Source: Octopus sinensis (Eukaryota). From it: a DNA stretch of 64,000 nucleotides. Location of the stretch: assembly GCF_006345805.1 (NCBI RefSeq), contig NC_042997.1, forward strand, positions 101,556,001 through 101,620,000, written 5' to 3'. Within the stretch, counting starts at the first letter, position 1, and each line of letters begins with the position of its first letter. Below are positions 1 through 64,000 of this stretch, piece by piece. The notes beneath the pieces were generated by a model. The model was given only the letters and a program-made list of their open reading frames with translations, was not told the DNA's origin and ran no database searches. The position numbers were made by a program, and so were the translations under genes.

Positions 1-1939
1 TAGCATGGCTGTTCGTACACACGCATCATACAGTCTGCCTTTCACTCTGTGCGAGAGGCCTTTTGTCACCAGTAGAGGTAAGAGCTCTCTGAACTTTGCC
101 CAAGCTATTCTTACTCTAGCAGTTACACTTTCAGCACACCCGCCCCCGCTGCTGACTTGGTCACCTAGGTAACGGAAACTATCAACTATTTCTAGTTTTT
201 CTCCCTGGAAAGTGACGGAAGTTGGTCTCAGAGCATTTTCAGTGTTTATTGTTCCTGAGCATCTGCCACATACAAAAACCATCTTCCTAGTTAGCCTTCC
301 TTTGACATTGCTGCATCTCTTATGTGTCCATAGCTTACACTTGGTGCATCTTATAGAGTTTCTACCTACACCTTTTCTACAGATCGAGCAGGGCCATCTA
401 CCTGAAGGTGTTTGTGATTTGTCTACCTTCCTACTGATTACGACTTTGGTTTTAGCTAGATTGACTCTGAGGCCCTTCGATTCTAATCCTTGTTTCCACA
501 CCTGAAACTTCTCCTCCAGTTCTGATAGCGACTCAGCAATTAGAGCAAGGTCATCAGCATAGAGGAGCTCCCAAGGGCATCCTGTCTTGAATTCCTCCGT
601 TATTGCCTGGAGGACTATGATAAATAGGAGGGGGCTGAGTACTGAGCCTTGGTGGACTCCTACCTCTACCCGGAATTCTTCACTGTACACATTTCCAACC
701 CTCACCCTACTAGCGGCGTCCCTGTACATGGCCCGCACAGCTCTCACTAACCATTCATCTATCCCTAGTTTCCTCATTGCCCACCAGATAAGGGATCGGG
801 GGACCCTGTCGAAGGCTTTCTCCATGTCAACAAAAGCCAGGTACAGGGGCTTATCTTTGGCTAGGTATTTCTCCTGCAGCTGCCTTACCAGGAATATAGC
901 ATCAGTAGTACTTTTCCCTGGCACAAACCCAAACTGCATCTCATCTAAACTAACTCTCTCTCTAATTAGTTGGGCTATGACCCTCTCCGTAACCTTCATC
1001 ACCTGGTCCAACAGCTTGATACATCTGTAGTTATTTGTATCTAGGGCATCACCTTTACCTTTGTAGCAGTTGACTATTATACTGCTACACCAGTCATTGG
1101 GTATGACCCCTTTGTGTATCACCTGATTAACTATACGGGTGACTAGGCTATAGCCGACACTACCAGACATTTTGAGCGTCTCTGCAGTGATTCCTGATGG
1201 GCCTGGGGCTTTCCCTGTCTTCATGCTTCTAATTGCCTTAGCTACCACGGAACTATCAACTCGGATAGCTGGTCCCTCTGTTGGGTCAACATTCGGCAGA
1301 CTCTCTTTATCCCATTCATTTTCTTCATTCAGCAACCTTTCATAGTGGCATCTCCAAACCTCTCTCTTTGCATCCTCATTTAGCGCAAGTGAACCATCTT
1401 CCATGCGAACACACTTCTCTCCTACCACATCACGATTCTCTCTCACACACTGTCTTGCAACACGAAGCACCTCCAGTCTTTGGTCCTCACGGCGCAGAAC
1501 ATTGGCAAATTTTTTCTTATCTGCTTCCCCTCTAGCTAAATAAACCTGTCTCCTAGCTTCTCTTTTGGCAGTCTGATACAATCCCCTGCTACCCCCATTT
1601 TTCCAGACCTTCCAAGCCTGTCTCTTTTCTCTAATAGCCCTGTCTACAATATTGTTCCACCACCACGTTATTCTAGGTCGAGAGGGGACTTTGCACCAGC
1701 CACAGATCTGGTCAGTGGCTCTCAGCAGGTTGTCCCTTAGAAACGTCCAGCTGTCTTCTACCCCCTGTGATGCTCTATCCCCTTCTACTTCGTCAGAGGC
1801 TTCAAGTAATATGTCCCTAAATCTCTGTCCATTTGCAGGATCTTTAAGCTTCCAGATCCTTCTTCTCCATATTTGTCGTCTTCTGGTTGTCCTCCTAGTC
1901 CTGATCCTAAAGTCACTAACTACCAGTCTATGTTGTGGG

Positions 1940-1944
<5 letters not shown>
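1..1944 (-). mobile_element. RTE-clade non-LTR retrotransposon ORF (end of APE region, RT, PHD finger); 5'-truncated, runs off window start
   Basis: Manual minus-strand translation gives 648 codons with no stop: CTPQHRLVV, KAPGPSG, NYRCIKLL, QFGFVPGKSTTDAIF, FVDMEKAFDRVP, GVHQGSVLSPLLF, ELLYADDL (YADD at 550-561), FRYLG, RVRIAWAKF. Missing from the ORF track, probably because it has no stop inside the window. Confidence 0.95.
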
Positions 1945-1999
<55 letters not shown>

Positions 2000-2000
2000 G
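1945..2000. repeat. (TA)n microsatellite between two oppositely oriented RTE copies
   Basis: Direct reading of the TA/CA dinucleotide run. Confidence 0.95.
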
Positions 2001-2001
2001 T

Positions 2002-2515
2002 ATGGAAACTGGGGATTCACGAATGGTTAATAAGGGGTGTACAGGCCCTATACAGAGATGCTGTCAGTAGGGTTATGATTGGAAATGAGCATAATGTAGA
2101 ATTCCGGCTTGTAGTAGGGGTCCACCAAGGATCAGCCCTCATGCCCCTCTTATTCATCATAGTCCTCCAGGCAATAACAGAGGAATTCAAGACAGGTTGC
2201 CCCTGGGAACTCCTCTATGCTGATGATCTGGCTATCAAAGCAGAATCACTACTAGAACTAGAGAAGAAATTTCAAGTTTGGAAGCAAGGTTTAGAATCGA
2301 AGGGCCTTAGAGTTCTAGTAAGTAGGAAGGCAAACACATCACACACCTCCTCAAGTAGGTGGCCCTGCTCGATCTCTAGAAAAGGTGTAGGTAGAAATTC
2401 CATAAGATGTACCCAGTGTGAGCTATGGACACATAAGAGGTGCAGCAACATCAAAAGAAGATTAACCGGGAAGCTAGCTTTCACATGCAGCAGATGCACA
2501 GGACCAACAAATACC
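2002..2515 (+). mobile_element. Internal fragment of a second, more diverged RTE copy (RT core end plus PHD)
   Basis: Translation KLGIHEWL...GVHQGSALMPLLF...ELLYADDL...WPCSISRKGVGRNSIRCTQCELWTHKRC is colinear with the 1-1944 protein. Confidence 0.92.
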
Positions 2516-2743
2516 ACATCGCCAGTCACATTTCCGTCATAGAAAAACGGGCCATAAAGATGCTTCTTACAGATGGCACAAAACACATTCACTTTTGGTG
2601 AGTCCTTCTCATGCTCAACTGTGGCATGGGGAGTTTCTTCACCCCAAATGCAAACATTATGCTTATTGACTTTACCATTTGTATGAAATGTGGCTTCATC
2701 ACTGAAAACAAGATGTTCGTTGAACTTGGCTTCTTCAAATTTC
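2516..2743 (-). pseudogene. Tc1/mariner transposase, catalytic-domain part (maT/rosa-like), 3'-truncated
   Basis: KFEEAKFNEHLVFSDEATFHTNGKVNKHNVCIWGEETPH...SPKVNVFCAI...GPFFYDGNVTGD; the first catalytic Asp lies in FSDEA. Confidence 0.88.
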
Positions 2744-3374
2744 AGTTCTATATTTAAGAGATGAGGAATTATGTACATTATTTACATTATTTGACAGATA
2801 TTTGTACTCATCTTGTTTGTTGTTAACACGTTTCGGCTGATATACCCTCCAGCCTTCATCAAGTGTCTTGGGGAAATTTCAAACATGGATTCTCATTCCT
2901 AAGGTATTTTTTGATGTTGTTATTATTATTATTATTATTATTAATCAGGTCACTGCCTGGAATTGAACTCAGATCTTGGTGTTAGTAGCCCGTGCTCTTA
3001 ACCACTACGCCATATGCCCATGGGCATATGGCGTAGTGGTTAAATAATGACATCAAAGAGAGGTTATCTTTATTACTTAGGAAAATAATCAGAGGTGATG
3101 ATAGAAAGAAAATCCAATAAGATCTTGGCCCACGGGCATATGACGTAGTGGTTAAGAGCGCTGCCTACTAACCCCAAGGTTCCGAGTTCGATTCCAAGCA
3201 GTGACTTGAACAATAATAATAATAATAATTATAATAATAACATCAAAAAATACCTTAGGAATGAGAACCCAGGTTCGAAATTTCCTCAAAACACCTGATT
3301 AAGGCTGGAGGGTATATCAACCAAAACGTTAACAAACAAGATGAGGACAAATATCCAATCAAATGTAAATAATG
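2744..3374. mobile_element. Inverted two-arm retro-insertion (tRNA-like head, (AAT)n, hammerhead-like tail) with 13-bp TSD; PLE pseudo-LTR-like or SINE dimer
   Basis: Arms 2744-3020 (-) and about 3128-3374 (+) are homologous. Flanks are TTCTTCAAATTTC (2731-2743) and TTCTTCATATTTC (3375-3387), which duplicate the transposase codons K-F/Y-E-E. Confidence 0.75.
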
Positions 3375-8689: not shown

Positions 8690-10777
8690 TATTTTTGCCA
8701 TTTCTCACTTCTACATGAGAAAATATATGTAAAACATGAACTGTTAGAGATAACTGTACTCTCTTATGTTTCTTCATTCTTTAAATGGTAATTTCTAATA
8801 TAGGGTATATGGGAGAGGGGAGCAGTTACTTATATCACCCCCACCTGACTAGTACTACATTTTATTGACACCAGAAGAACAAAAGAACACTGACCACAGT
8901 AGAATTTGAACTCAGAACATAATTGGCTGTTACTAAATACTACAAGGTATTTTATCCATGCTCTGTCATTTCTACCAGTCTACCATTCTGTTCTTTCTGT
9001 AACTCCATATTAGACTCAAATATTCTACCTGTTTAATGTTCAAACCAGCCAGATCCCACATCTCACACCTACCCTACAAAGTCATTCTAAAAGTAAACAA
9101 TCACATCACTGGAATCTTGAAGCTACAAGATAATACATAATTAATTCAAAACAATGTGAATATATAAGCTTTATATTTAACAGAGTAATCTGAATGCTAA
9201 AGAATTAGAGTAAAATTCATGTATCTTTTACCTTTTACTAGCTTCAGTCATTGAAATGCAGCCATGCTAGGGTATGCTGTATGTTATACTCATTTACGAG
9301 TTTTATTTTCCAATCACATTTTCTTGTCAATTGCTACCAGGATATCTCTTCTGATGTCTATCAGGATGTCTGTGTCTTAATGTCTGTCTATCAGGATATA
9401 TATATTTTACAGTCTATTTAGATATGTGTTCTAACAATTTTCAACTTTCATATAAATGAGCTCTTATACTTGTTTAACTCCTTATACAGAATGAGCTAAA
9501 ATAAATTTATCTTCCACTCCTTTACTCTTGTATGTATATCAATTGTACTTGAACAGGAACTAGTCTCTAACTGCTTAGAGGTTTATTAATATCAATGAAC
9601 ATATTTACATTCATCTAAGCTGCCTTCAGTTACTATCAGTCAGTTTTAGCTTACACACTAATATATTGTTTCTATCTTTGGATTAAAAAATATCACCTGA
9701 AGAAGCTTGAAAATAATTAACTTTAAACAACTAACTGTAAGTTCTTTCTTTCTCTTTCCATTTATTTTTCTCTTTCTTTGTATAAATTCTCTTTACAAAA
9801 ATTGAAAAACACTGTTGATACTTATAGTGTTTTAGTATACAAAAATGTGATCATACAAAGAATACTCATTTTACTTGTTAGACTTCAGCGATGCTGGGTA
9901 TCTTATGTATGTCCCTGCTGGAACTTTGAACATATATCCCCTTGTTAATGTCTAAGTGATGTCGATTGAGTCCCTCTGTATTTTCTTTTTTCTTTTTCAT
10001 TTAACTTCTCATATGAATAATTTTGTTGTTCGGACACTTGACTTAGTTTAAAAATCTAAATGTGTATTCACTATTTAATCTTAAGTTAAACCAACTATAG
10101 ATTTCAAATTTCAGCGTTTTCTCAAATATATGCCTTATAAACAGTGTTACACCATCCACTTTCTTTTCTCATACATAAACACTTTAACATTATGTTCATT
10201 GACTTGAGCTGTACAAACTTATCATTTTTCATTATATGTAGAAAATACTTTCAGGTACTTTACTAATTGTTTGTTTCATGCTAAAGTTGGTTCTCCCCAC
10301 ATGGTCGTAGCTTACTGGTGGAACAATCGTAATATTATTTGGGGTTTTGTTTAATTTTAAAACAAAATAAAATCTTGATCCTTGTTAAATTAAAAATATA
10401 TTATTTTGATATCCCTAATGTTTACATTTTGAAAATTTTAATCACTGTTTATATTTATTTTAAAAGAAAATTTGCTCTTCAGATTTTAATTCAAACTCCA
10501 ATCTTCTGCCTGAAGATTAAATTTAAGGAATATAGCTGTTTTGTGTAAGACCATTTACATTATACTATAAGCAATATCTTTGATCTAACAAGGGGTTAAT
10601 TTATCTTCTGGAGTAAAAATTTACCTGGCAAAGTGTAAAAATAATATACCCGAAAATGAAGTGTTCTATAATGTTTAAGTGTAAAACCTTACTCAAGATC
10701 TTCCCTTTTCTGTTTTCTATGTCTCCCCACCCCCTTTATTTTAAAGTAAAGTGTTGAATGGCAAAATACATCTAGCT

Positions 10778-22700: not shown

Positions 22701-24776
22701 GGTGCAGCTGCTGGTTCTTCAGACCTCAGTCAAACTGTCCAGCCCATGCCAGTATGGAAAACAGACGTTAATCGATGATGATGATGAAGGTGTAAATGCA
22801 CTTGAAACCCAGAATAGAAGGAAAGCAAAATGAGATACAAAAAATAAAAATTTTTAGCAAATCAAAGAGCAATAACAAAAATTGATATTTTTTAACAGAT
22901 TAACCACCATTGCCAATGCACTTTGTGTGTGTGTGAGTGAGTGTGTGTGTGCACCTATCTTTCTCTTGTGGCTGAGATTATTTTCTGTTACAAGTAAGAT
23001 TTTTTTGAGTATTGTTGATCTCATAACAGATTTTTGATGTGTAAGACATGGTATTTATTACAATGTGACTGTTACTTTATTTACACCTTGTTATTGTTTA
23101 GTCCCAAGTTAGCCTTAATGAAGCAGACCTATGATCAAAGGCCACCCAGCCTGTCTTTTTAAGGGTGTTTAGAAATACATTATCCTGGGTATCATTTACT
23201 TTTTCATGACAGTACATTGTCATGTGAGGGAAATTTAGCTGCTATTTCTAGTAGATCAAGTAACAACATAGAGGCTCCATTATGTTTTACTAGTTTTTTT
23301 TTTTCCAATCAATTGAAGCATGTTGCATCTGTTTTGACATCCAATCTATTTTTATATGATCAATATCTCAAGAGTAGTGTATAGTATTTCAGTTCTTTAA
23401 GATGTATTAACTATTAAGACAATAGTAAGCTTTGATAGAAACATCATCTCGTATTATTTTTATGTTATGTTGTTTCCATGAATTATATCAAATTTTACTG
23501 TTAGTCTATAACTTGTTATGGCTATTTCATCATTCTATCACAGCTTTGAAGATTCTATAAGTGTCCAAATAATTAGGAATTGTTAATGCAATTTTTTTTT
23601 ATAGCAGAATCTTGTGCTTAAAACTCAGCGTCTAAGTAGACTAAAACAAAAATATAGAACAATAACCCACTTGTTCAGTAACTTGATCACACAGGTGCTT
23701 CACCTGTATAGTCACCATATCTCTCTGTTATTCAAATCACATTTTGAAAATTAAAAGCACATTTATCCTTCCATAAAATTAGTGCACATGTTTGTGTATA
23801 TGTATGTGTGTGTGTGTATGTATATGTGTATGTATCTGTATGTTTATGTATATGTTTATGTATGTATGTGTGTGTGCCTCTACATGTTTATGTATGTGTG
23901 TATGCACATATAACATATAATCACCCTACTTGCATAAATACCTACAAATAATGCCTAGCAGCAAGTCATTAATCCATCTTGCACTGAAAATCACGTTTAA
24001 ATTGTTTTCATACCTGGCAAACAATCAAATAGTTTCTGATTTCCTTCCAATCAGTCAGGTGAAAGCCCAGCTTATGTATCACTGCTCTTCTGTTACCTTT
24101 ACAATGGAGAAGTTGATGATGAGTAAAAAGTCTTACATCATTGTATTTCTACTATTCAAATATGTATATATTCTTACTCATGTACATAAACAATAGAAGG
24201 GAATGTACATTTTTTTACACATAGTTATGTAGACCATTTAACACTCGAGTATAGATGTATCTTTGCATGTACGTAAATAAGTGTTTGTGTCATGATGTTG
24301 CAACTATATGCATGTCTATTTCACACACACATATACATATATAAATGTTTTTATATATAACCATGCAGTCTGATTAGCTTTTGGAACTGTATAGCATAGT
24401 TCTTTTTTTTTTCTCTGGTTTTATAAATTATGGTAAGATTATTGTTTGATGTGACTGATTTCTTAAAATCATTTCCTAAAATATGCCTATGTTTACTGCA
24501 CAATTCATACTATTTAAAAACTATGTATCAATTAAAATCTTCCCCAGGAAATATAATAGATTTCAAATTCCTAACCAACAGTTGTGTCAGAAATATAATG
24601 AATCATGATTTTGAAACTCCATCATTGTTTTGCAAATTATTTTTTAAGAATATTTTTCATCTTTCCATACAAATACATGCATATTATTTTCACCTTCCCA
24701 TGAAAGACTCTCTCAAAATCATTTATTTGCGAAGTAAAATTCACAGAAAACCCTTACCACATACTGTTTTGCAACA

Positions 24777-25349
24777 ATGGTATCAAATGATATTGATATA
24801 CGCACTGTCGAGAAATTTGTTCGAGATTTAAGTTATGAAATATCTCAAAGGGAATATTATCGCCATGTCCTGCAGAGACGATATCAAAAGGAGCATCTTC
24901 TGAGAAAATTTTACCAAGATCTTTTGCTTCAAAGACAACTAAGAGAACATTTAAAAGGAACTTATTATCATGAGCATTATCAAAAGCAACGTCTTCATGA
25001 ACAAAATCTACGGAAATATTATCAAGAACACTTGAGGAGAAGCCAATTCCAGCTGCTTTTGCTAAAGAAACTGAATCAAAATGTTTTTGATTCGTGTCTA
25101 TACAAAGAATATTTGCAAAGAGAACAATTGCAATTACTGCTTTTGAAGCAAGAACAAAATCTATCAAAACAACTAAAGAACCAAAAAGAGTGTACCTTTA
25201 TAAATTTTCAAAAGTACAATTCCTGTGATGAACTTTTCCTTGTAAAAGAATACCAACATATCTTTCAGGAAAAATTATACAAGCATATATTACAGACAAA
25301 GCTATATCAAAATATGTCCATAAAAAATTCATTTAATCACAATGATTAA
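24777..25349 (+). CDS. Hypothetical 190-aa Q/E/K/L/Y/H-rich helical protein (orphan-like, not TE-like)
   Basis: Longest non-TE ORF. Start context ACAATGG, AATAAA at 25428-25433. Internal repeats (QFQLLLLK / QLQLLLLK, EHLLRKFYQD / EQNLRKYYQE) differ largely by synonymous codons. Confidence 0.6.
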   Translation: MVSNDIDIRTVEKFVRDLSYEISQREYYRHVLQRRYQKEHLLRKFYQDLLLQRQLREHLKGTYYHEHYQKQRLHEQNLRKYYQEHLRRSQFQLLLLKKLNQNVFDSCLYKEYLQREQLQLLLLKQEQNLSKQLKNQKECTFINFQKYNSCDELFLVKEYQHIFQEKLYKHILQTKLYQNMSIKNSFNHND

Positions 25350-26324
25350 GAGAGTCAGAATTTCATCCAAAATTACTTGATTTTCCAAAAGTTCCTTCTT
25401 AGAACTATAATAACTAATATCCACCAAAATAAATGTTTGGAATGCATTATGGAAAATGTTTCGAACTTGAAATAGGAACATAGTCGAAGTTAAACATTTT
25501 AGAAGAACTTACTTCCTGGCTGGTAATTCTTTTAGAATCTAACACTGTTGTAATAGATTTAGAGACAAACTTTTCCTTTTGTGTAACCTCTGTAATCAAA
25601 CAAACTAACAAATTCTTTCTGCAAGGTAGCTACAATTTCTTTTTTTGACAAGCACAAATGATATCTCAGTCACTTAAAATACTCAATAATGGATTATTAA
25701 TATTTCTAATGCACAAACAACTTCATACCCAATATACTTAATTATATTTGTTAACACTCTATTAACATGTTTTCTTTGTTGCTTTTGTTGTTGGATATTA
25801 CTTACATACGTGCACTTTTATGTTAACATATTCTATTTCTAGACAATTTCATTCCCATTTGACTAACATGTTCCCAAAATATGCACATTCAAATAATTTA
25901 TGCAGTACTAAAATTTTACATTCAAAAATATTTTGCCTTAATGTACACAGGCACACCCACCTACATGCAACACACATACACTCACTCACACACATGCAAA
26001 CAGACATTCTATGTTGCCAGCATATAAAAAGGCTTTTCACTGTTATTGAATGTATCAAAACGTTGCCTTGTATCTAATGCAACTATATCTCTATTATGAT
26101 AGGAGGCCAGTATTGTAGTCTAGGGAACTAGATAAGCATAAGTCCACTAGGTACAATAATTGTTACTAATAATAAAATATTGAAAACAAGCCAAATTATC
26201 ACAGTCTGTCAGCACAAACTTATGCAAAGATGTTAACACTACATCCGTACTTAGGTTGTGGAGGTGACATCATCTCATTCTACTTCCTTCCCCAGCATAT
26301 TTACCCTATACCTCTCTTTACTTG

Positions 26325-30866: not shown

Positions 30867-32145
30867 CCATATACATATATGTGTATTCATATCTATTTAT
30901 ATAGATAGATAGATAGATAGATAGATACACATATATATAAGCATACATATATACATATATATATATATACACACATATATATACATGCATATTTATATAT
31001 ATGTATATGTACACACGTATATGTACATATAAGCATGCTTATATATACATATATATGTATACATGTAATATATGTATATATATATATATATATTCAAGAT
31101 ACTCTGTCATACAAAATATCCAGCTATTCAAAGAATACAGTCTACTCTGCAAATCAACATTTAGTTCTCATTTGCTTAGTGTTGTTCTTTTTTTATTTTG
31201 TGTGCACACACACACACATGCACATGCAGACACACAAACATGAGATATGGATACATATGTATAGTAATTGTAGGTGACTTGTACCTGCATATACTTGTAA
31301 ACGAGAAAATTGTTCTATATAAATTCTAGATATTGGTATCTTTACTTTTTTTTTCTATTTGTTTGTATTTTCACACACACTTGCACTCCCTTATATCTCA
31401 TCATCATTATCATCATTTAATGTCTGTTTTCCATGCTGTCATGGGTTGAACGGTTTGACAGGAGCTGGCATGTCAAAAGACTATGCCAAGTTCTGTCTGC
31501 ATTGGTATGGTTTCTACAGCTAGATGCCCTTCCTAATGCTAACCACTTTATATGGTGTACTGAGTAGTTTTTACATGGCACCAGCAATAGTGAGGTCACC
31601 AAATAATTTACAAAACAAGACCCCCTCAGCTGAGATGGGAAGTAGTATTGCAGAGGGTGGCTTTGTGCCAGATAAGAGGTTAGACTATGAGTAGAGGTAC
31701 AGAAATATGTGTCTTGCAGTAAAGGAGATACATGGCTACTTCAGTATTAGAGAGAAAGGAGGAGGAAGAGTGGAGGGAGGGAGGGAGAAAATAGTCTGTG
31801 GTGGAGTACACTCAAGTTACAAGGAGGTGTATATAAGTGAAGTAAAGGGCCAAAGATTGGATAAGGTGAGTAGGTTATTGTGAAAGGGTATTGGGGACAG
31901 TGGGAAGGGAATGTAGTGAGTGGACGGAAATAGTGGGAGGGGGTTTTAGGAGGATTTTGTGGGAAAGAGATTCCACAAGGGTGGTTGGGAGATAGAGGGG
32001 TGGGGGTACACCAGATGGTGGGCGTGGTTGGGGGAAGGGGGTGCTGAGAGGATGGGATATGGGGGAGAGGTTTGTCAAGAAAAGATTGTCTGCAAGGTAG
32101 GGGAAAATGGATATATATATATATATATATAAACATATCTATATA

Positions 32146-32194
<49 letters not shown>

Positions 32195-32963
32195 CAGGCT
32201 TGTCCTTTACAGGTGCTGGTGCTGTATGATGCATCCATGCCAGTGGCACATAAAAAGCACCCAGCACATTCTGTAAAGTGGTTGGCATTAGGAAAGGCAT
32301 CCAACTGTAGAAACTATGCCACAACAGACAATTTGGAGTTTGGACCACTTCCTGGTTGGCCAGCTCTTGTCTAACTGTCCAGCTCATGCCAGCATGGAAA
32401 ACGGACATTAAACGATGATGATAATATACTGTGGACATCATAAGAATTTAAAAAGTTCGAGAGAAGATGAAGTAATAGAGTAATTCTTTTTTGGTGGGAA
32501 ACAGTGAATCTCAGACTAGACAAAGTTATGAAAAAAAACATGTAAGCATATCATGTTTAGAGATGTAAGTCTGAGTCCCATGGGTAGCCTTTGACTTTTT
32601 CTGTCCAAAAGGGTTTCCAGCCCAATATTTACATGCTATTATTTATAGCTGTATCTGTTTTGGGTTTCACCATTCCAAAAATGAATTATTTCATCTCTAG
32701 AACTTTCTAAATTCTTACGACATCAACAACATGCAGTTCTCGTTGGCAAGAATATAATTTCTAAAATGGATTGAGAAATTTGAAGGATAGTTTTGGTCTT
32801 CACTGGTAGAACACCTTTCATGTTTACAGATGTTGGTTCGAGTTTTATGGGCAGCCTTCAACATTTTCTGTTCAAAGAGTTTTAAAAGAATTTTTTTTTA
32901 ATGCACTAGTTAGTTACATGCTATAATTTAGAACTTTATCTGCTTGAAAATTCAGTTTCAAAA

Positions 32964-35250: not shown

Positions 35251-36806
35251 GTATGTGTGTATGTATGTATGTATGTATATACATGTGTGTATGTTTGTAT
35301 GTGTTTATTTAAGACATTGACAACTATGTTTTATTAGGCAGATTAAAATGTTTGCTATGAAAAGCATTTAATGTGTTAATCTCCACAAACTGTAAAATCC
35401 ACAATCTGGTTTTACTTTCTGGTTTGATTGACTTTACTTGCTACCATAGTTCTCTTACAATAGTCAATTTTACTCCACCTGTTAATGTTTTCCCTTCCCT
35501 CATGACTCATAGCCATATGCTTTCATACCTGATTAAGATATACTCTTAATCATCAGCATCATCACCAACACCTTTCCAGCTGCTTCTGTTACTCCTGCTG
35601 CTTTATGTACTTTACAAATTGTCAAGGATGTCTGACAGATTAACAGATAACCAAATGTTCAGAAACTTTCTAGAGTAGTCAGAGCTTCTATCAGCTGAAG
35701 TCTTTCAATTGCTAAAACATCTCATTAAATAGTTCACACTTTTTTGTTATCTCTGTGACCAAACTAGTGTTGGGAGATTGTCCTACTGAGAGCATGGCTG
35801 GTAGAAGAAGAAAGCTATAGCAAGTAGCATTTCATTTGAAACAGTACACTATGGCAGTGAAATGGGTTTTGAACATTGAATATGGAATATCTGGAGTGAC
35901 TGGAAGAAAAAATTAAGTAAAAGTGTGCCCATTCATTATATAACGCTAACTAGAATGAATGACAGAACACTAGGATGTAGAATAAGTAGCTGAGTATTAA
36001 AAGCATTAACTGAGCTGGGTGTGTGTGTGTGTGTGTGTGTCTATCTATCTTCTGCCACATCATACCTATTCCTGCTCCTCTATTATACTTCAGCCTCACA
36101 ACAATTGGCATAAACTCCCATTCTGCTAGACCCTTTCTCAGATGAGAGTGTTCTTTAGTTTTGTGAGTTACATGGTAATCAATCTCATTAGGGCTAGTGC
36201 CACAAATAAAGCACTCAGTACACTCTATAAAGTGGTTGGTGTTAGGAAGGGCATTCATCTATAGAAACCATGTCAAAACTGACTGCATCTGTCACATCCT
36301 CATCTCCCAACCTTCTCACAATTATCCCAAGCCTACACACCATTATTCCACACTACAACACATACCTGCACACCTCCACACAAACAAGAAACTTTATGCA
36401 CCCCTACCTCACACACACACACACAAACACACACACACTTCTCCCTATACCCATTTCTGTACCTTGATACCTTCCTATACATGCACATTCCATCCTGACC
36501 CCATACCCTTTTTTGTTGTTGTTTTTCTTATTCTTTTATTTTTTTCTGATGAGGAGCTAGTGCCCAAAATATCAGGACACTTTTCCTTCTTTTTAAGTAT
36601 TAAACTAATACAACATTTGTTAAGGCTTATCCCTCCTGTGTTGGCTTCTTTTTGAACTTTCTGTCTAATGTGTGTGTGTATGACGAAATTGAGATAGACT
36701 ACAACATAATCAAGACTAACTATAACAATTTTGAGCCCTGATGATGACAAATTTGAAGGTTAACCCTGTATTTATATATAATTGTGTATGTACATATACA
36801 TCATTG

Positions 36807-36899
<93 letters not shown>

Positions 36900-36932
36900 T
36901 ATATATATACACATACACATATGTATGCATAT

Positions 36933-36980
<48 letters not shown>

Positions 36981-37252
36981 ACATGTATGTATGTATGCAT
37001 ATATGTAATTAACTTTATGTTTGTGTTTGTGTATACATCATCATCATTGTTTAATGTCCACTTTTCCATGCTTACATGGATTAGAGAAAACTTATTAGAT
37101 ATAACCTGGACATGCTTTCACAGAGGATTACAAGCAACTCACAAATTATGTTGGTGACTTGTGCACAGATGTCATGACAAGAGGAACAGAGACACTTATA
37201 TATTTATATATCATATTATATATATTATATATACATTATATATATATATATC

Positions 37253-39213: not shown

Positions 39214-39406
39214 TATAGGTATAGGCATGCCTATGTGATTAACAACTGTGCTTTGCAATCATGTGGTTTATAGAAATATATACACACACACACATATATA
39301 CACACATACATACACATACATATATATACATACATATGTATATACATGTGTATATATGTGTGTGTGTGTATTTATATGCATTCATTTCTATCCACATCTT
39401 TAAGCA

Positions 39407-39478
<72 letters not shown>

Positions 39479-40104
39479 GAATCTTCATCCTTATTCTCTC
39501 CTATATTCACTTTCTTGTACCTTGAGAGCATACCCTGACACCCTCATCACTACCATCATTTTCCTCATTCCAGCTGCAGTAACCATGTATCTCCTTCACA
39601 GGCAGAGACTTGTTTCTGCCTGCCTTTTAACAACTAGTATAAAACCATCTCCCTTAATACGACACACCCACTTAGTTGATAGGTCTTGTTTTGTGAGTTA
39701 CTTGGTAACATCATTAATATAAGTACTATGGAAAATGCACCCAGTACACTCTGTAAAACGGTTGGTATTAGGAAGGTCATACAGCCATAGGAATCATGCA
39801 AAAAGCAAACTTTTGAGCTTGATGCAACCTTCTAGCTCATAATAATTGTGTGTGTGTGCGTGTGTATGTATATATGTGTGTGTGTGTGTGTGTGTATATA
39901 TATGTATATGTATATATTTTTTTATATATATATATATAGGTATGTGTGTATGTATGTGTATACTTTATAATTAGGGTTCAGCAAAGATATATGTGTGTAT
40001 ATATATGTATATGTATATATTTTTTTATATATATATATATAGGTATGTGTGTATGTATGTGTATACTTTATAATTAGGGTTCAGCAAAGATATATGTGTG
40101 TATA

Positions 40105-45463: not shown

Positions 45464-46879
45464 TACATAGAAAAGAATTATGTTGCATATCTAATTCTAC
45501 ATGCTATGATGCTGTTGTATTTGGTGTCTTAAAGAAAAAGATATGCTAAAATGATTTCTTGATGCCTTTTGCATGATGCATGAAACCTAAGATTTGGGAG
45601 TGGAATGAAAGTTATGACATTCATCAGCAACTTAAGTTATATCGAACAGTCCTAAATAGCTATGTACTGTGTTGAGTGGAATGTGGTATTACAAGACAAA
45701 TACCCATTTGAAAAAAGTTTGTTTTTGTTTTTCTGTGTAGCTGTGTACTTAATGCAGTAATGAGAGGTTCTTAAAGCATTAATGAGCAGTTTATCTTGAA
45801 ACTAATTGTTTGATATCAAAGAAAATATTTTTTTTACTAAATTGAATGGTTGTTTTTAGGTCATAAAGAACCATGTCATTCATTTATTATTTGAGAGATA
45901 CAGCTGGCTTACTGTTTCACAGCCCATATTAGTAATGTGTAATATTCATAGCAAATACACCTGTTCACACAGGTAAGTAACAAGGGTGATTGATTTAAAT
46001 GATGAGTTGTGAAAGTTCTATACATTGAGCAATAGTTTTATGATTAGTTACTTGAAAGTTTTGATCTAAAATCTCTTTTATCAAAAGTTCAGTATTATAA
46101 CTAAGTTTAGAGGTGTCTCTCAACTGCTCTATACCTTGAAAACTGAGATAAATAAAATCTAACACCATTGAGGTTTGAAGGAGAAATAAGGTTATTAGTG
46201 CTAATATTTGTAATGTAGTGTTGAGTAAGGTGATACAATTCAGAATGTCTTTGTGTTTGGTTGCTTCATACAAAATCATTAAATAAAAAGGAAATAAAAC
46301 TGTTAAACAAATTAATTTAATATACAAGCCTGCATACAGATCATCTATTAACCCTCATGAGCCTCTTATAATGTAAAGGTTTACTTTGACAAAGAGGAGA
46401 ACATGAAGAAAGCAATTATGTAATGCTGTTCATATACTACAGGGAGTAAACCATATCACTTATGATCCTTGTCTGAACAATTACATTGCAGAAAGAAATC
46501 ATTGGTGTAACGCTGAAGAGAGATAACAGCTGGTAAGGTGAGGAGTGGATATTGATTAGAACTAAAACAGGTTTTTTTTTGCCTTTTTTCTTTTCCAGTT
46601 TTTTTCATCATTCTTACTTAAGAACTGAGTATCAGTTACACTCAGATGCACTTGCATCATCTCTCATCACTTTTAGTGCATTTCACTCACCAGACACTGT
46701 ACTGAACATTTCACTCAATCCTTCTTTTGAAGATAGACATCCTTTTAGGATACCCTCCCTACACTTAACCACATACCCCCACCCTCAATATCAATATGGG
46801 AATGTTGAAAAGAAAAAAAAACAAAAAAAAATAAATAAACATCAACTCTATCAACCTTACCAAGCTATTCTTATTCATT

Positions 46880-50767: not shown

Positions 50768-51500
50768 TCAGGCTGATTAAAAAGTAAGTAACATTTCATC
50801 ACAATTTATTTCAACAATGAAGAAATTTTATTCATCAAAGTACCATTACAATCAACACATTTCTACCAAGTTATAAGTTTGTTTATTCCAGTAACATAAA
50901 AATCTGGAGTTCTGGAGCTGATGAACTCTTTGAATGCTCTTTCAGCATCAGTTTGATTTTTGAGCCCCTTCTCTTGCAGGAAACCATCAAAGTAAGTGGT
51001 AGTCGGTAGGAGAAAGATCTGGGGAATAAGCTGGGTGGGGAAGAACTTCATAGCCAAGTTCCCTCAACTCCTGGAGCATCTGTAGTGAAACATGTGGTCA
51101 AGCATTGTCATGAAGAATGATTGGCCCTCTTCTGTTGACCAGTCTGGGACAGAAGAGTTGCAGATTTTTGTTCATTTTGGCAATTTCATGGCAATATGTT
51201 TCTGCAGTAGTGGTTTTTTGGGGGTTTTAAAAAGTTATAGTGGATGAGTCCAGCAGTACAGCACCAAACAGTCACCATAACCTTTTTGAAGAGCTCAGAG
51301 ATTAGGAAGGTTTTCAGTGCTTCATTTTGGTCGAACCACTGCGAAGAATGTTATTTATTATTGTACAGAATCCACTTTTCATCGCAAGTTACAATACAGC
51401 CGAGAAATGGATCAGTCTGGTTACGGAGAAGTGATGAGCAAATTTCATATCTGCACATTTTCTGATTTTCATTAAAATCATGTGATACCCATTTGTTGAG
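50768..51500 (-). pseudogene. Mariner (DD34D-type) transposase 3' two-thirds with right TIR, decayed
   Basis: YEICSSLLRNQTDPFLGCIVTCDEKWILYNN...KVMVTVW and AFKEFISSRTPDFYVTGINKL. Frameshifts present; the terminus lies next to TA. Confidence 0.85.
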
Positions 51501-54500
51501 CTTCTTTGATTTTCTGATTGCATCCAGCTGTAGAAACTTTGCCAGATCAGATTGAAGCCTGGTTCAGCCTTCTGGCTTGTCAGCCCTCAGTCAAACTGTC
51601 CAACCCATGCCAGCATGGTAAGCGGACATTAAACAATGATGATGATGCAGGCATAGCTAACTTGAAGTTCCTTTGCTAGTTCTCGAGTGGTTTTACGTGG
51701 ATCTTTCTCGATGACAGTCTTTAATCAACCGTCATTGATAAGAGATAGGTATCTACTATGCTTACAATCTTCAAGGCTCAAGTCTCCATTGCATGTTCGG
51801 TTGGATGGGATACTTGAATTTGTTCAAAAGCTTCATAGCACAGTCTTTCTTCTTGTCCTTGATGGTTTGGGATAAAAGTTGGCCTTTCTTATTTTGTATG
51901 AGGAATACTGAATGCCTTCATGCAATACCTGCCTGATAAGAAACTTTGGAAATAGTTCTGGATCTTTGGAAATATGCTGTGCTTGAGAAGACCCAGCAAG
52001 CCAAATATGATTGTAGCCATGGCCAATGCCAGTGTCACATAACCGGCCCATTTAAAAATGCCCTTCAATTGTTATATATGTGTGTGTGTGTGTGTATATA
52101 TATATATGTATATACACAGTAGAGTGTAACAGACTTAACCCTTTTGGTTAAGTCCCTGATTCTTTGATATAAACTTTCTATATAAAGGGACCTAAATTAA
52201 AATTTCACATTAAAATTCCATGTTATTTTATGTTCCAATTAGTAATGACCATGATATTTTAGTAAATTCTTTATTGTTTTTCAAAATTTATTGAAATAAA
52301 GAGGGTGTAGTTCAGCAGAAATATGGGAATGAATGGGTTGATATAGTCATCTATGCAATTAATTATTAGACAGAATCTCTCTCTGTGAATGTTTAAAATC
52401 CAAAAAAATTAATTGATTGGAAGTTTTGGAAACTATTAAAAAAATATGCAGATTTAGTTTTGAAACCAACTGGGAAAGGCTGTGGATATGTTATGGCTTT
52501 ATTAAACTTCCTCAGTGTTTTATTAAAACAATACTATGTGATTCAAGATAAATTTTGTTGCTATTTCTAGCAGGTCACCTGACTACACTAGGAATGTTAG
52601 TAAATAAATATGTAGCAACTTACTGTAATCAAAGAGTTAAAGTTTTTGATATTTGAAAGAACTGGATTGAGTGAGATTCATTTTTGCAGTGGAATTTTGG
52701 ATGTTTAGTCCTATTGTTACCACAATTCTGTTGAATTAATTTTATTTTGAAAATGATAAAGAATTTAGTAAAATAAATTTGCTCTTATTAACCTGGTGTT
52801 TTGAAAATGAATGAGCATGAATTTAGATGAAAGATTTAAATCTGAATCACTTTAAAGTTTGTCTCATAGAACCAGGACCAGTTTCATGCTAGTCAGTATA
52901 AAGATGATTAAAAATGATTGGACATTTAAGTATGAAAAAACTTAATAATTAGCATGTTGTAAGCTTTTATTACTACCCTTTCTTATCTCTCATATTTATC
53001 ATTATATACTTAGGATTTTATGGAATATTCATGTTAGTTTTCAGTACTAATGGTAACTCAAAAGGATTGCTTACAAATGATAAGAGTATTATAGTAGAAT
53101 CAGTTGTAACTGCTACATTAATAGCTGCTAGAGTAACTGTAGCAACTGAGGCTGCAAAAGAAGCAATATCTATTAAGTTTTATTATAAAGCTAATGAAAA
53201 ATGTTTCATGCCTGAAATCAATAACAATTACACAATTCTGACAAAAATCTCTTTTAACTTTCAATAAAGAAAATGTTTCCAATACAGATGTTTATAGATA
53301 TTAGAAGCTAATATTATATAACAAAATATTTATGTACCACATGGAATTGAGTAAAATTATATATATATATATATGAAATTGCAGCTGCTATTATTTTTTT
53401 ATATATATATATAATTTTACAGATATTGCTTTTTGTGTTTTTATTATACTTCTATGTCCAACTTCATGATATAGAAAGAAAAATGAATTGTCTGTGGGAA
53501 TCAATAAAGTTGACTGAACATGAATCTGATGCAGTGCCACTAATATGCCAATTGTTTCATCCATATATATTATGTGTACGCCTTTCATGTATATCTGTTC
53601 ATATATAGACATATTTCTATGTTTACATGTCTATTCATTGGATATATATAGCACTGTATGCTTACTAAAATCTCCTAGCAGTTATTATGGATTAACTGTA
53701 CATTAAGTGTTGCGTTTTACAAAATAAATTACTACAATCCATTATTTATTCTACTTAGGTTTCCTTTTAATGTAAATCATTGTATATGTGAATAAATATT
53801 ACATTCATTGACAAACTGATGTAAAAAGAAATGGGATGAGTAGTTTATCTTAGCCAATAATTTAATGAGGGATTTATTATTCAAATGTATTATTTATACT
53901 CTCGAAAATCTGAATAAGTTACAAACCATTTGTGACCTCCTGAGTTTGTACAGATTGTCTTTGATGAAATGAAAAAAAAAGGAAGTTGAAAAGAGAGAAG
54001 AAACTAGTTGATAGTACTTTTCCTCACCATGGACACTATGCAGGTGTTTTAGATGAAAATCAATTAAAGGATAGTTGAATGGTTCACTAAGATTTCTCTT
54101 AGTATGGTAGTATAAGTATAGTGTTGAATGAATGATGTTTTGTAGATGTTTAATGCTGGTTGTAATATTTAATATTAATAAATGAGTAAATTCTTTCTTT
54201 AAATATTTGTTGTTTTGTTAGTAATAATTATTTTTCACTGTCATAATAATTTTCGTTACACTTATTTATTTCAAGTGGTTCAGTTTTCTGATTCATTAAT
54301 TAAGAACTTCAATTTAAAATTAAAACCTTAATTAAAATAAACAATAACACAGACTACTGAAATCCTTTTAGTTTGGCACTCAAACATTTTTGCTGCTCCA
54401 CTGCTTTAAAATCACAATAAGATTTATCGCTGAATATTCACTTTTATAGAAAAATTTGATTTCAAAAAAATAAATGAGAATTTCTTTACATTTCAAATAT

Positions 54501-55809: not shown

Positions 55810-55960
55810 TGGTAAGTAGCTTGCTTACAAACCGCATGGTTCCAGGTTCAGTCTCACTGCCTGGCACCTTGGGTAAGTGTCTTCTACTATAGCCTCGGGA
55901 TGACCAAAGCCTTGTGAGTGGATTTGGTAGACAGAAACTGAAAAAAGCTCATCGAGTGTG

Positions 55961-56009
<49 letters not shown>

Positions 56010-56235
56010 ATATATATGTGTGTGTGTATATGTTTGTGTGTCTGTGTTTGTACCCCCCAACATCGCTTGACAACTGATGCTGGTGTGTTTGCGTTCCCGT
56101 AACTTAGTGGTTCGGCAAAAGAGACTAATAGAATAAGTACTAGGCTTACAAGGAATAAGTCCTGGGGTCGATTTGCTCAACTAAAGGCGGTGCTCCAACA
56201 TGGCCACAGTCAAATGACTGAAACAAGTAAAAGAG
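55810..56235 (+). mobile_element. Near full-length SINE family A
   Basis: Colinear with 14673-15125. Confidence 0.88.
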
Positions 56236-62660: not shown

Positions 62661-62739
62661 ATATTATTATTATCATTATCATCATTATTGATGTTCTGGA
62701 GAACTCCCAGAGAGTTCTTAATTACCAGTTATTCTTTAC

Positions 62740-63110
62740 TTGAAAGGTTTCAAGTAGTGCCTTCTCCTGTAACTCAAAGAGACAATACCCCTTAGAATGT
62801 GAGCTGTACCCAACAATGCTGCCTTTTGGATCACCTCGAGTCTGACAGCAGCCCTAGTATTCTTAATATGTTTTTCAAAGCCCTTGGAAACTGCTCCTAG
62901 TGCTTCAATTACCACTGGTATCACCATCACTTTCCTTATGCCCCATAATTTTCCTATCTCATCCCGCAGTGGCTGGAATTTCTCAGTCTTTTCTGTTTCC
63001 TTATATTTCACCTTCGAATTACCTGGTATTGCAACATCTATTATCTTTACTTCTTTTTCATCTTTGTGGATGAGCATGATATTATTATTATTTCCTTTGC
63101 ACAGCTTCTA
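62740..63110 (-). pseudogene. R4/Dong-type RLE C-terminal fragment
   Basis: IIDVAIPG...KFQPLRDEIGKLW...VIPVVIEALG...IQKAALLGTAHILR. Confidence 0.85.
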
Positions 63111-63169
63111 ATGCTGGAGATGTACTACAATGCAGCTGTTCACTACCAGTGAACTAAGGTAGCACATCT

Positions 63170-64000
63170 TATTTTTCGAGCAGCTTCCGGATTATTCAAG
63201 CAGTTCCAAGCAGTGCTGTTTTCTGCAAGTGCTCCACCCTTATTGCAGCCCCTATTTGTTCCACATACTTCTCAAGATTTTTACTCACTGTTCCCAGGGC
63301 TCCGACAATTATTGGTACTACTGCTACCTTTTTCATCGACCACAATTGCTTAACTTCCCAAGCTAACCTGTCATATCTCTCAACTTTTCTTTCTTCCTTA
63401 TTGCATACCTTGTTGTCAGCTGGGCATGTTGTATCTATGATCCAGCATAGTTTGTTTTCTTCCTCAATTAAGACTATGTCCAGCTTCCTATTCTCTATCT
63501 CATGGTCGCACTGGATCATAAAATCCCATAGGGTCTTTGCATTTCTACTTTCGATGATGCCTTCAGGTTTGTGGTCGTACCAATTTTTTGGTCTGTCAAG
63601 TTCATACTTGTTGCAGAGTGTCCAATGGACAATCCTGGCTATATTGTCATGGCATCTCTTATATTCCTTCTGAGCTAGTGGCGTACATTGGCTGGTAATA
63701 TGCCATACGGTTTCACCATTTTGTCCGCAGATTCTGCACTTATCACTTTCTGATGTGTTGTCTCTTCTGTATTTTATGTAGTATGTTCTTAGTGCTTGCT
63801 CTTGGGCAGCACAGATTTCCAGTTTTAAATCAATTTTCATCATCTACAGCTATCTTTTTTCTCTGTCTGTTTTATCTTCAACATCCCTATGAAATTGACC
63901 ATGCATTCTTTTCTTTATCCACCTATTTTCAGTTTCATTCGTTTTTAATTTCTTGTATAGTGCTTTATCTTTGCAATCTTTCATCCTACGCAAGTCTGAC
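63170..64000 (-). mobile_element. R4/Dong-type LINE 3' part (CCHC finger plus RLE), runs off window end
   Basis: MHGQF (in the stretch upstream of the listed ORF), then CAAQEQAL...CRICGQNGETVWHITSQC...KEYKRCHD...LWDFMIQCDHEIENRKLDIV...IIDTTCP...VVPIIVGALG...LQKTALLGTA. Confidence 0.9.

What the first reader, a model, noticed from the sequence alone, without database searches (positions are those of the whole stretch)
24777..25349. Candidate lineage-specific 190-aa protein with internal repeats showing synonymous divergence
Seen: a stop-free 190-codon frame in very AT-rich DNA with no TE motif I recognise. Repeats QFQLLLLK (caa ttc cag ctg ctt ttg cta aag, 25044-25067) and QLQLLLLK (caa ttg caa tta ctg ctt ttg aag, 25125-25148) keep the amino acids while changing codons. 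EHLLRKFYQD and EQNLRKYYQE do likewise (gag/gaa, ctg/cta, aga/cgg, tac/tat). Kozak-like start and a downstream AATAAA are present. Inference: this pattern suggests selection on the plus-frame protein, likely an amphipathic or coiled-coil, His/Tyr/Gln-rich orphan protein. It is the only convincing host coding sequence in the window.
Basis: partly seen in the sequence, partly recalled or inferred. Interest (0 to 1): 0.7.

Follow-up and report, generated by a model that had tools for sequence, protein, structure and literature searches.

The report
Conserved small gene for helical repeat protein
The 190-codon open frame is very probably a real, fast-evolving, single-exon gene for a basic, almost entirely helical protein built from 9/18-residue tyrosine-leucine repeats, with one relative in another animal-like genome, no known family and no known function.

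Summary
ORF length alone is weak evidence: about 0.03 open frames of this length (203 codons) are expected by chance per 64-kb window.

Independent evidence does show coding. An exhaustive HMMER search of 1.84 billion proteins found one relative, on a 211-kb ENA contig. Read with the standard code it is a 193-codon ORF. It is colinear from Met-Val-Ser to the C-terminal repeats at 31-32% identity.

- Only this frame is open and similar in both loci.
- Codon position 2 is most conserved and position 3 least.
- 35 of 57 identical residues use different codons.
- pS 0.84 is saturated; pN is 0.45.
- Flanking DNA is unalignable.

Both proteins are basic (pI 9.5) with significant 9/18-residue Tyr/Leu periodicity. 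AlphaFold2 models each almost entirely as helix: 8-183 here; 4-128 and 132-174 in the relative. The hydrophobic period is 4.5, not a heptad. There is no Pfam, PDB, viral or transposon link, and no second copy. Function is inferred only; expression is untested.

The parts
24777..25349 (+). Complete coding sequence, 190 codons plus TAA. The product is 24 kDa, pI 9.45, net charge +11, rich in L/Q/K/Y/E/R/N/H, with no obvious hydrophobic N-terminal signal segment by eye (not tested with a predictor).
   Evidence: Homologous 193-codon ORF at L001:10001-10582. Coding-type conservation.
24774..24780 (+). Start codon context acaATGg (A at -3, G at +4). The homologue has aagATGg, also A at -3 and G at +4. 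Both proteins begin Met-Val-Ser.
   Evidence: Only 8% of ATGs in the window have this context. An in-frame stop lies 14 codons upstream, at 24735-24737.
24831..25322 (+). Repeat region, residues 19-182. It consists of degenerate 9-residue units (consensus about Y-Q-E-x-L-x-x-K/R-x) with an 18-residue super-period. It is best preserved at residues 19-90 and 150-182 and degenerate in the middle. It lies inside the modelled helix (residues 8-183).
   Evidence: Aromatic periodicity. Self-similarity by lag. Hydrophobic period 4.5. Conserved hydrophobic residues at register 0 and 4 mod 9. AlphaFold2 helix 8-183, mean pLDDT 80.6.
25044..25067 (+). It is a 9-residue unit in which Phe replaces the unit's Tyr.
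25125..25148 (+). At DNA level it shares an exact CTGCTTTTG with the first copy, shifted by one codon.
24891..24920 (+).
24999..25028 (+).
25428..25433 (+). AATAAA, a candidate polyadenylation signal 79 nt after the stop. This is weak evidence: the hexamer is common in this AT-rich DNA. The homologue has ATTAAA 115 nt after its stop.

Best explanation
Window 24777-25349 (+) is a genuine protein-coding gene whose whole CDS lies in one exon. It has been kept open by purifying selection while evolving fast.

Its 190-aa product is a basic (pI about 9.5), cytosolic-looking protein that forms essentially one long alpha-helix, about 175 residues or about 26 nm. The helix is built from degenerate 9-residue units (Tyr at position 1, Leu at position 5, Lys/Arg near position 8) with an 18-residue super-period. 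Eighteen residues equal five turns of an unstrained helix. The conserved Tyr and Leu residues therefore tend to line up in straight seams on different faces, rather than in the winding seam of a heptad coiled coil.

Shown: the ORF, its conservation, the periodicity and the helix prediction.

Inferred: a straight, two-faced helix of this kind most likely works structurally. It would either pack side by side with copies of itself or lie along a periodic polymer such as a cytoskeletal filament. The combination of single exon, strong basic charge and rapid divergence is what one typically sees in germline, sperm or cilia-associated structural genes. That last step is a guess, at about 0.25.
For: 1. 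An exhaustive phmmer search of 1.84 billion representative proteins gave one hit at or below the reported threshold (E 0.001): E 7.8e-5, query 5-180 against target 4-174.
2. That hit's gene call had read TGA as Trp. With the standard code the locus is a 193-codon ORF. BLASTP gives 32% identity over 187 residues starting at M1-V2-S3.
3. The Smith-Waterman score is 206, against 64 +/- 10 for residue shuffles (z = 14). Against shuffles of 9-residue blocks it is 123 +/- 14 (z = 5.8, 0 of 1000 reach it). The match is therefore colinear homology, not just shared repeat composition.
4. Only frame +0 is stop-free and similar in both loci. The other five frames carry 2-19 stops and score 32-109.
5. In the codon alignment, nucleotide identity is 0.435 / 0.592 / 0.391 at positions 1 / 2 / 3, against 0.256 / 0.368 / 0.289 expected from composition. 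Of 57 identical residues, 35 use different codons. Shifted frames give 15-16% identity.
6. pS is 0.84, which is saturated, against pN 0.45.
7. The ORFs are fragile: 7.4-8.6% of single-base changes would create a stop. Survival of about 290 random substitutions without a stop has P around 1e-10.
8. Flanking DNA shares only (TA)n/(TG)n microsatellites.
9. It is single copy in the window. The homologue's 90% cluster has 1 member on 1 contig.
10. The 9/18-residue periodicity, basic charge and helix prediction are shared by both proteins.
Against: - There is no evidence of transcription or translation. None of the available tools covers RNA-seq or proteomics for this organism.
- Only two family members are known, so selection is inferred from one saturated pairwise comparison. 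The window copy specifically could be a recently inactivated paralogue.
- The middle of the window protein (residues about 95-150) has lost much of the Tyr periodicity, and pLDDT falls after residue 130.
- The promoter, any 5'-UTR intron and the poly(A) site are not established.
- The functional inference rests on sequence geometry only. Neither a profile search nor a fold search against solved structures, which I would expect to include axonemal microtubule-inner proteins (my assumption), found a relative.
- AlphaFold2 was run on a two-sequence alignment, and long single helices are a common default output.
Confidence: 0.75

Rival explanations
1. The ORF belongs to a low-copy mobile or virus-derived element, for example an accessory or ORF1-like helical protein. 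Its conservation would then reflect selection on the element, not on a host gene.
For: The window is full of transposon debris: LINE RT/PHD at 1-2542, mariner remnants and LINE-tail ORFs. LINE ORF1 proteins are often basic and contain long helices (my knowledge). A CDS confined to one exon is also consistent with this.
Against: - There is no second copy in 64 kb or in the 20.7 kb of L001.
- No RT, endonuclease or transposase domain was found in the tested ORFs of at least 110 aa around the window ORF. No Pfam hit is on record for any gene called within 10 kb in L001.
- Only one cluster member on one contig was found among 15 billion predicted proteins. LINE RT from the same window finds 1846 relatives.
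- There was no match in IMG/VR viral contigs.
- No convincing terminal repeats flank the ORF. The inverted repeats found are short, AT-rich and 70-92% complementary.
Confidence: 0.08
2. The window copy is a dead or dying paralogue or retrocopy of a functional gene located elsewhere. Its frame would be open only because inactivation is recent.
For: The CDS lies in one exon. The central repeats are more degenerate than in the L001 homologue, with 16 against 21 Tyr. The locus sits in a gene-poor, transposon-rich stretch. No expression data exist.
Against: - The full-length frame, the start codon with its favourable context and the C-terminal repeats are intact, although 7.4% of possible point mutations would create a stop.
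- No poly(A) tract or target-site duplication is visible by eye in the DNA after the ORF.
- The homologue in L001 has the same one-exon CDS layout, so this layout is ancestral for the family and not a sign of retroposition.
Confidence: 0.1
3. The ORF is a chance open frame in AT-rich or cryptically repetitive DNA, and the database hit is a compositional artefact.
For: - About 0.03 such ORFs are expected per window, so a large genome would hold hundreds to thousands.
- The antisense frame is also open for 147 codons.
- The protein is low in complexity (Q/L/K/Y/E), and only one database hit exists, at E 7.8e-5.
Against: - The match is colinear from residue 1, beats 1000 of 1000 block shuffles that preserve the repeat units, and is frame-specific.
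- The conservation gradient across codon positions is the coding one.
- Both ORFs have nearly the same length, the same Met-Val-Ser start and the same A(-3)/G(+4) context.
- The antisense frame is neither open nor similar in the homologue.
Confidence: 0.03
4. The ORF is one exon of a larger multi-exon gene, so the 190-aa product is not the real protein.
For: - L001 has a strong splice-acceptor-like sequence (ttttttttag) 4 nt before its ATG.
- The window has ttcacag 30 nt before its ATG.
- The frame is open 13 codons upstream of the ATG in the window and 55 codons upstream in L001.
Against: - Similarity starts exactly at the shared Met-Val-Ser and is absent upstream.
- Both frames end in a stop within 7-16 codons after the last conserved repeat, with no good donor site there by eye.
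- The acceptor-like sites fit a 5'-UTR intron equally well.
Confidence: 0.04

Closest known systems
Canonical heptad coiled-coil proteins
   Same: It is long and uninterrupted, lacks Pro and has a single Gly, and has regularly spaced Leu and aromatic residues. It is predicted helical over about 175 residues.
   Different: The hydrophobic period is 4.5 residues and the sequence repeat is 9/18 residues, not 3.5 and 7. An 18/5 repeat gives straight seams with no supercoil, and much of the conserved Tyr and Leu falls on two different faces. No coiled-coil Pfam family matches.
Filament 'ruler' or lattice-binding helical repeat proteins (for example nebulin on actin, axonemal microtubule-inner proteins such as CFAP53/MNS1, CCDC39/40)
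   Same: This is a working analogy only. Shared traits are a basic, extended helix, a short periodic motif with a conserved Tyr, small size and no globular domain.
   Different: There is no sequence match to any solved chain or to the nebulin or TPH Pfam models. Foldseek returned nothing. The repeat length differs: 9/18 residues against about 35 for nebulin (my knowledge). No localisation data exist.
LINE ORF1-type helical nucleic-acid chaperones
   Same: It is small, basic and helical, and is encoded in one exon in a transposon-rich region.
   Different: It is not multi-copy. No ORF2/RT lies next to it in either genome. No RRM, CTD or esterase module is present.
Taxonomically restricted ('orphan') fast-evolving genes of invertebrate genomes
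   Same: It has no Pfam domain and one relative among 15 billion predicted proteins. It shares 32% identity with that relative while the surrounding DNA is unalignable.
   Different: It is not a recent de novo gene. The frame, length, start and repeat architecture are shared with a genome so distant that no transposon family is shared in the DNA available.

Membership tests
Protein-coding gene (generic) | The open frame is conserved in a second genome, and conservation is specific to that frame. | tested here: met
   A 193-codon ORF in L001 is colinear at 31-32% identity. The other five frames carry stops and score low.
Protein-coding gene (generic) | Substitution pattern of purifying selection: position 2 more conserved than 1, and 1 more than 3, with synonymous sites more diverged than non-synonymous ones. 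| tested here: met
   Identity is 0.592 / 0.435 / 0.391 at positions 2 / 1 / 3. pS is 0.84 against pN 0.45. Of 57 conserved residues, 35 use different codons. dS is saturated, so no numeric dN/dS can be given.
Protein-coding gene (generic) | Transcription and translation. | not testable with these tools
   No transcriptome or proteome of the source organism is reachable. The exact protein is not in the 15-billion-protein collection.
Heptad coiled coil | A hydrophobic period of 3.5 residues (a/d core positions). | tested here: not met
   The power spectrum peaks at 4.5 residues in both proteins. Self-similarity peaks at 9, 18, 27, 36 ... and is negative at lag 7 in L001.
Single alpha-helix (SAH, E/K/R-rich) domain | Composition dominated by Glu/Lys/Arg, with almost no hydrophobic residues. 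| tested here: not met
   The window protein has L 31, Y 16, F 9 and I 7 of 190 residues, and Q 25.
Transposable-element ORF (for example LINE ORF1) | Many dispersed copies, and adjacent RT, endonuclease or transposase genes. | tested here: not met
   It is single copy in the window and in L001. There is one cluster member on one contig. No TE domain was found in the ORFs scanned around it, and none is on record in L001. The copy number in the source genome itself could not be measured.
Any Pfam-A family (including nebulin repeat, TPH, tektin, RIB43A) | A profile match at or near the gathering score. | tested here: not met
   Both proteins returned 0 families at E up to 10.
Solved-structure relatives (including the axonemal microtubule-inner proteins I assume are in the PDB) | Sequence or fold similarity to a PDB chain. 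| tested here: inconclusive
   The profile against PDB gave only 2 chance-level hits, at E 0.35. Foldseek gave 0 hits. A single long helix carries almost no fold information, so the absence of a match does not exclude a functional analogy.
Viral gene | A relative in viral contigs. | tested here: not met
   None found in IMG/VR.

The most novel reading that the evidence does not exclude
The two ORFs are the first seen members of an undescribed family of straight-helix 'nonad' (9/18-residue, 18/5) repeat proteins. Their alternating Tyr and Leu seams would let a single helix about 26 nm long bridge two surfaces of a periodic cellular polymer, for example as a spacer or ruler in sperm or ciliary structures of a marine invertebrate lineage. 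This would be a design distinct from heptad coiled coils and from nebulin- or MIP-type repeats.
Probability: 0.15. Interest if true: 0.6.

Novelty: new variant of a known kind. Interest (0 to 1): 0.4.

Why it matters
If confirmed, this is a real gene for which I found no called or annotated product in the collections searched. It sits in a transposon- and microsatellite-laden region where automated annotation tends to find nothing. It would define a protein family with no Pfam or structural relatives and an unusual 9/18-residue helical periodicity.

The practical value is modest but real. It would be a clean test case for finding small, fast-evolving genes by cross-genome ORF conservation. It would also be a candidate structural protein, possibly germline or ciliary, in a poorly annotated animal lineage. 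It does not bear on a long-standing open question, and taxonomically restricted helical proteins are common, so interest is moderate.

Tried and rejected
- A word-indexed protein search with the ORF alone found nothing. With the two-sequence profile it found only P0001 again.
- Exact-sequence look-ups of the ORF and of two transposon ORFs from the window were all absent. The LINE RT from the window finds nothing above 56% identity. The source species is therefore evidently not in the collection, and the absence of a self-hit says nothing about expression or annotation.
- Two scans of JGI metagenomes and one scan of IMG/VR found no relatives.
- The PDB profile search and the Foldseek search gave nothing usable.
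- Rfam and tRNA scans of the window found nothing.
- Upstream DNA of the two loci does not align, and there is no synteny within the available flanks.
- Literature searches for nonapeptide or 18-residue Tyr repeats, and for the ENA accession, returned nothing relevant.
- A TMEM33-like ORF at 45995-46324 (-) was followed up as a possible second host gene. The hit is sub-threshold, and no further TMEM33 pieces were found on that strand up to 64000. I treat it as probably spurious.
- The antisense 147-codon frame is rejected as a gene. It is not open or similar in the homologue.
- I could not determine the organism. My impression of a cephalopod or other marine invertebrate rests only on base composition and microsatellite style, and is untested.

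Full report
**1. What is in the sequence**

The window is AT-rich (about 30% G+C around the finding). It is full of (TA)n, (CA)n and (GA)n microsatellites and looks like animal nuclear DNA.

On the plus strand an ATG at 24777 opens a 190-codon frame that ends with TAA at 25347-25349. The stop-free stretch begins 13 codons earlier, at 24738.

- the two Leu-rich octapeptides at 25044-25067 and 25125-25148;
- the two decapeptides at 24891-24920 and 24999-25028, with the codons as quoted;
- a start context acaATGg;
- an AATAAA at 25428-25433.

**2. Is that more than chance?**

Not on ORF length alone.
- From the local stop-trinucleotide frequency (5.9%), about 0.03 open frames of at least 203 codons are expected per 64 kb on both strands.
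- Markov simulations that reproduce the microsatellites reach 190 codons in 3.5-6.5% of windows.
- A large genome would therefore contain many such frames by chance.
- The Kozak-like context occurs at 8% of ATGs, and poly(A) hexamers occur about twice per kb.

- The QFQLLLLK/QLQLLLLK pair shares an exact CTGCTTTTG shifted by one codon. It re-aligns at 19/21 nt identity with two 3-nt indels.
- The second pair shows 5 synonymous and 5 non-synonymous differences.

The repeats themselves are nevertheless real.
- Tyr/Phe residues recur at lags 9, 18 and 27 more often than in any of 5000 shuffles.
- BLOSUM self-similarity peaks at multiples of 9.
- All five direct DNA repeats inside the ORF are spaced by multiples of three bases, whereas the two outside it are not.
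- Base composition is strongly codon-periodic: A is 55% at position 2, and C is 32% at position 1 against 6% at position 2.

**3. Independent evidence: a homologue**

Pfam gave nothing, and a word-indexed search of 5.8 billion protein clusters gave nothing.

An exhaustive phmmer search of 1.84 billion representatives returned one protein at or below the reported threshold of E 0.001. This is P0001, at E 7.8e-5, aligned over query 5-180 against target 4-174.
- It is encoded on a 211-kb contig of ENA analysis ERZ21867824 (locus L001).
- That contig is also AT-rich (31% G+C) with the same kind of microsatellites.
- The stored 246-aa product had been called with TGA read as Trp. Under the standard code the frame is 193 codons, nearly the same length as the window ORF.
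- The two proteins both start Met-Val-Ser. They align colinearly to the last repeat at 31-32% identity, with three in-frame gaps.

**4. Tests of that homology**

- The Smith-Waterman score is 206. Residue shuffles give 64 +/- 10 (z = 14).
- Shuffles that keep 9-residue blocks intact but destroy their order give 123 +/- 14 (z = 5.8; 0 of 1000 reach 206). The match is therefore positional homology, not only a shared repeat motif.
- Of the six frames, only the proposed one is stop-free and similar in both loci.
- The 147-codon antisense frame of the window has 4 stops in L001 and scores 32.
- In the codon alignment, identity is 0.435 / 0.592 / 0.391 at positions 1 / 2 / 3, against 0.256 / 0.368 / 0.289 expected from composition.
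- Of 57 identical residues, 35 use different codons. Frame-shifted translations of the same alignment are 15-16% identical.
- Nei-Gojobori proportions are pS 0.84 (saturated) and pN 0.45.
- The frames are unusually fragile, because Tyr, Gln, Lys, Glu and TTR-Leu codons lie one step from a stop. Between 7.4% and 8.6% of point changes would be nonsense, against 4.2% for uniform codons. About 290 unconstrained substitutions would leave the frame open with P around 1e-10.
- Outside the ORF the two loci share only microsatellites.

Together these results show that the plus-frame protein has been under purifying selection since the two genomes, or two paralogues, separated.

**5. Host gene or mobile element?**

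- The ORF is single copy in the window and in the 20.7 kb of L001.
- P0001's cluster has one member on one contig. The two-sequence profile finds nothing else in 5.8 billion clusters. By contrast, the LINE reverse transcriptase at window 1-2016 finds 1846 relatives.
- The other ORFs of at least 110 aa within about 7 kb of the window ORF, all scanned, gave no RT or transposase match. No Pfam hit is on record for any gene called within 10 kb in L001.
- There is no relative in IMG/VR or in JGI metagenomes.
- I see no poly(A) tract by eye after the ORF and no convincing terminal repeats around it.

A host gene is therefore the best reading. I could not measure the copy number in the source genome itself, because that genome is evidently not in the reachable collections.

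**6. Gene structure**

Similarity starts at the shared ATG. Both ATGs have A at -3 and G at +4. The window has an in-frame stop 14 codons upstream. Both frames stop 7-16 codons after the last conserved repeat. The CDS is thus complete in one exon.

L001 has an excellent acceptor-like ttttttttag 4 nt before the ATG, and the window has ttcacag 30 nt before it. This hints at a 5'-UTR intron, but that is inference only.

**7. The protein**

- Size and charge: 24 kDa, pI 9.45 (homologue 9.56), net charge +11 (homologue +12), GRAVY about -1.
- Composition: no Pro and a single Gly in the window protein. By eye there is no hydrophobic N-terminal segment.
- Structure in the window protein: AlphaFold2 on the two-sequence alignment models one helix from residue 8 to 183. 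Mean pLDDT is 80.6 and exceeds 88 for residues 11-130.
- Structure in the homologue: helices at 4-128 and 132-174.
- Repeat unit, clearest in the homologue: YQEFLQRKL / YYQFLQSKF / YQAVLQRTL.
- Conserved hydrophobic columns fall at register 0 (Tyr) and 4 (Leu) of a 9-residue unit.
- The hydrophobic power spectrum peaks at 4.5 residues, not 3.5-3.6.
- In the homologue, multiples of 18 are the strongest lags.
- Eighteen residues make five turns of an undistorted helix. Tyr46/64/82 therefore lie on one straight line (280 degrees), and Leu41/59/95/113 lie on another line 140 degrees away.

This is not a heptad coiled coil and not an E/K-type single alpha-helix.

My mechanistic reading is inference. 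I see a straight rod of about 26 nm with two sticky seams and a positive surface. Such a rod would either pack laterally with itself or lie along, or between, elements of a periodic polymer.

The single-exon layout, basic charge and fast divergence are typical of germline, sperm or cilia structural genes. I put that at about 0.25.

A profile search and a fold search against solved structures found nothing. I would expect those structures to include axonemal microtubule-inner proteins, although the tool output does not say so. This result counts mildly against membership of a conserved axonemal family.

**8. Context and the claim 'only convincing host CDS'**

- Window 1-2542 holds two inverted LINE fragments with RT and PHD domains.
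- Positions 2272-2778 and about 50990-51724 are mariner remnants.
- Positions 62736-63843 hold two ORFs that look like LINE tails.
- Most other long frames are microsatellite translations.
- One 109-aa ORF at 45995-46324 (-) gives a sub-threshold TMEM33/Pom33 match (18.3 bits against a cut-off of 24). No further pieces were found on that strand.

I found nothing that rivals the 24777-25349 ORF.

**9. Verdict**

Three corrections apply:
- It is not strictly an orphan.
- It is not a canonical coiled coil.
- 'Lineage-specific' remains untested.

Expression is unproven. Interest is moderate. It is a probably real small gene with no called or annotated product in the collections I searched, and it would found a new 9/18-residue helical repeat family of unknown function.

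No step had to be referred.

Noticed in passing
window 1-2542: Two LINE fragments lie in inverted orientation. A 672-codon open frame on the minus strand (1-2016) carries RVT_1 (E 4.8e-32) and a PHD finger. A plus-strand frame (1577-2542) carries a partial RVT_1 and PHD. The best database relative is only 56% identical. One hit, filed under a Candidatus Thiodiazotropha MAG 'ex Lucinoma', may be bivalve-host DNA mis-binned (my guess).
   Followed up: partly
window 2272-2778 (-) and about 50990-51724 (-): These are decayed mariner/Tc1-type transposase remnants. The second matches Pfam Transposase_1 at E 2e-4 and is split over frames by stops. The first was recognised by eye only.
   Followed up: partly
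window 45995-46324 (-): A 109-aa hydrophobic ORF gives a sub-threshold TMEM33/Pom33 match (E 0.0016, 18.3 bits against a cut-off of 24). It has plausible splice sites: acceptor ttgtttaacag near 46300 and donor CAAG|GTATAG near 46135. No other TMEM33 pieces were found on that strand up to 64000, so it is probably spurious.
   Followed up: partly
window 24754-25197 (-): A 147-codon open frame lies antisense to the finding. It is a by-product of the sense codon composition, and is neither open nor similar in the homologous locus.
   Followed up: yes
window 62736-63843 (-): Two adjacent ORFs of 113 and 215 aa share a '...ALGTVSK...LEKY...AALLGTA' tail that looks like the C-terminal region of a LINE ORF2. 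Neither has a Pfam hit, and the exact sequence is not in the collection.
   Followed up: partly
L001 10001-10741 (ENA ERZ21867824, ctg118751l): The public gene call for the homologue reads through a TGA at 10580-10582 as Trp, adding 53 spurious residues. The contig looks like animal host DNA inside a 'metagenome' assembly. Its taxon is unknown to me.
   Followed up: partly
window-wide, for example 23779-23951, 31747-32304, 36716-37069, 39261-39722, 55960-56040: Dense (TA)n/(CA)n/(GA)n microsatellites create many long stop-free frames. Simulations preserving this composition give a mean longest open frame of about 154 codons per window. ORF length is therefore a poor gene signal in this genome.
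   Followed up: yes
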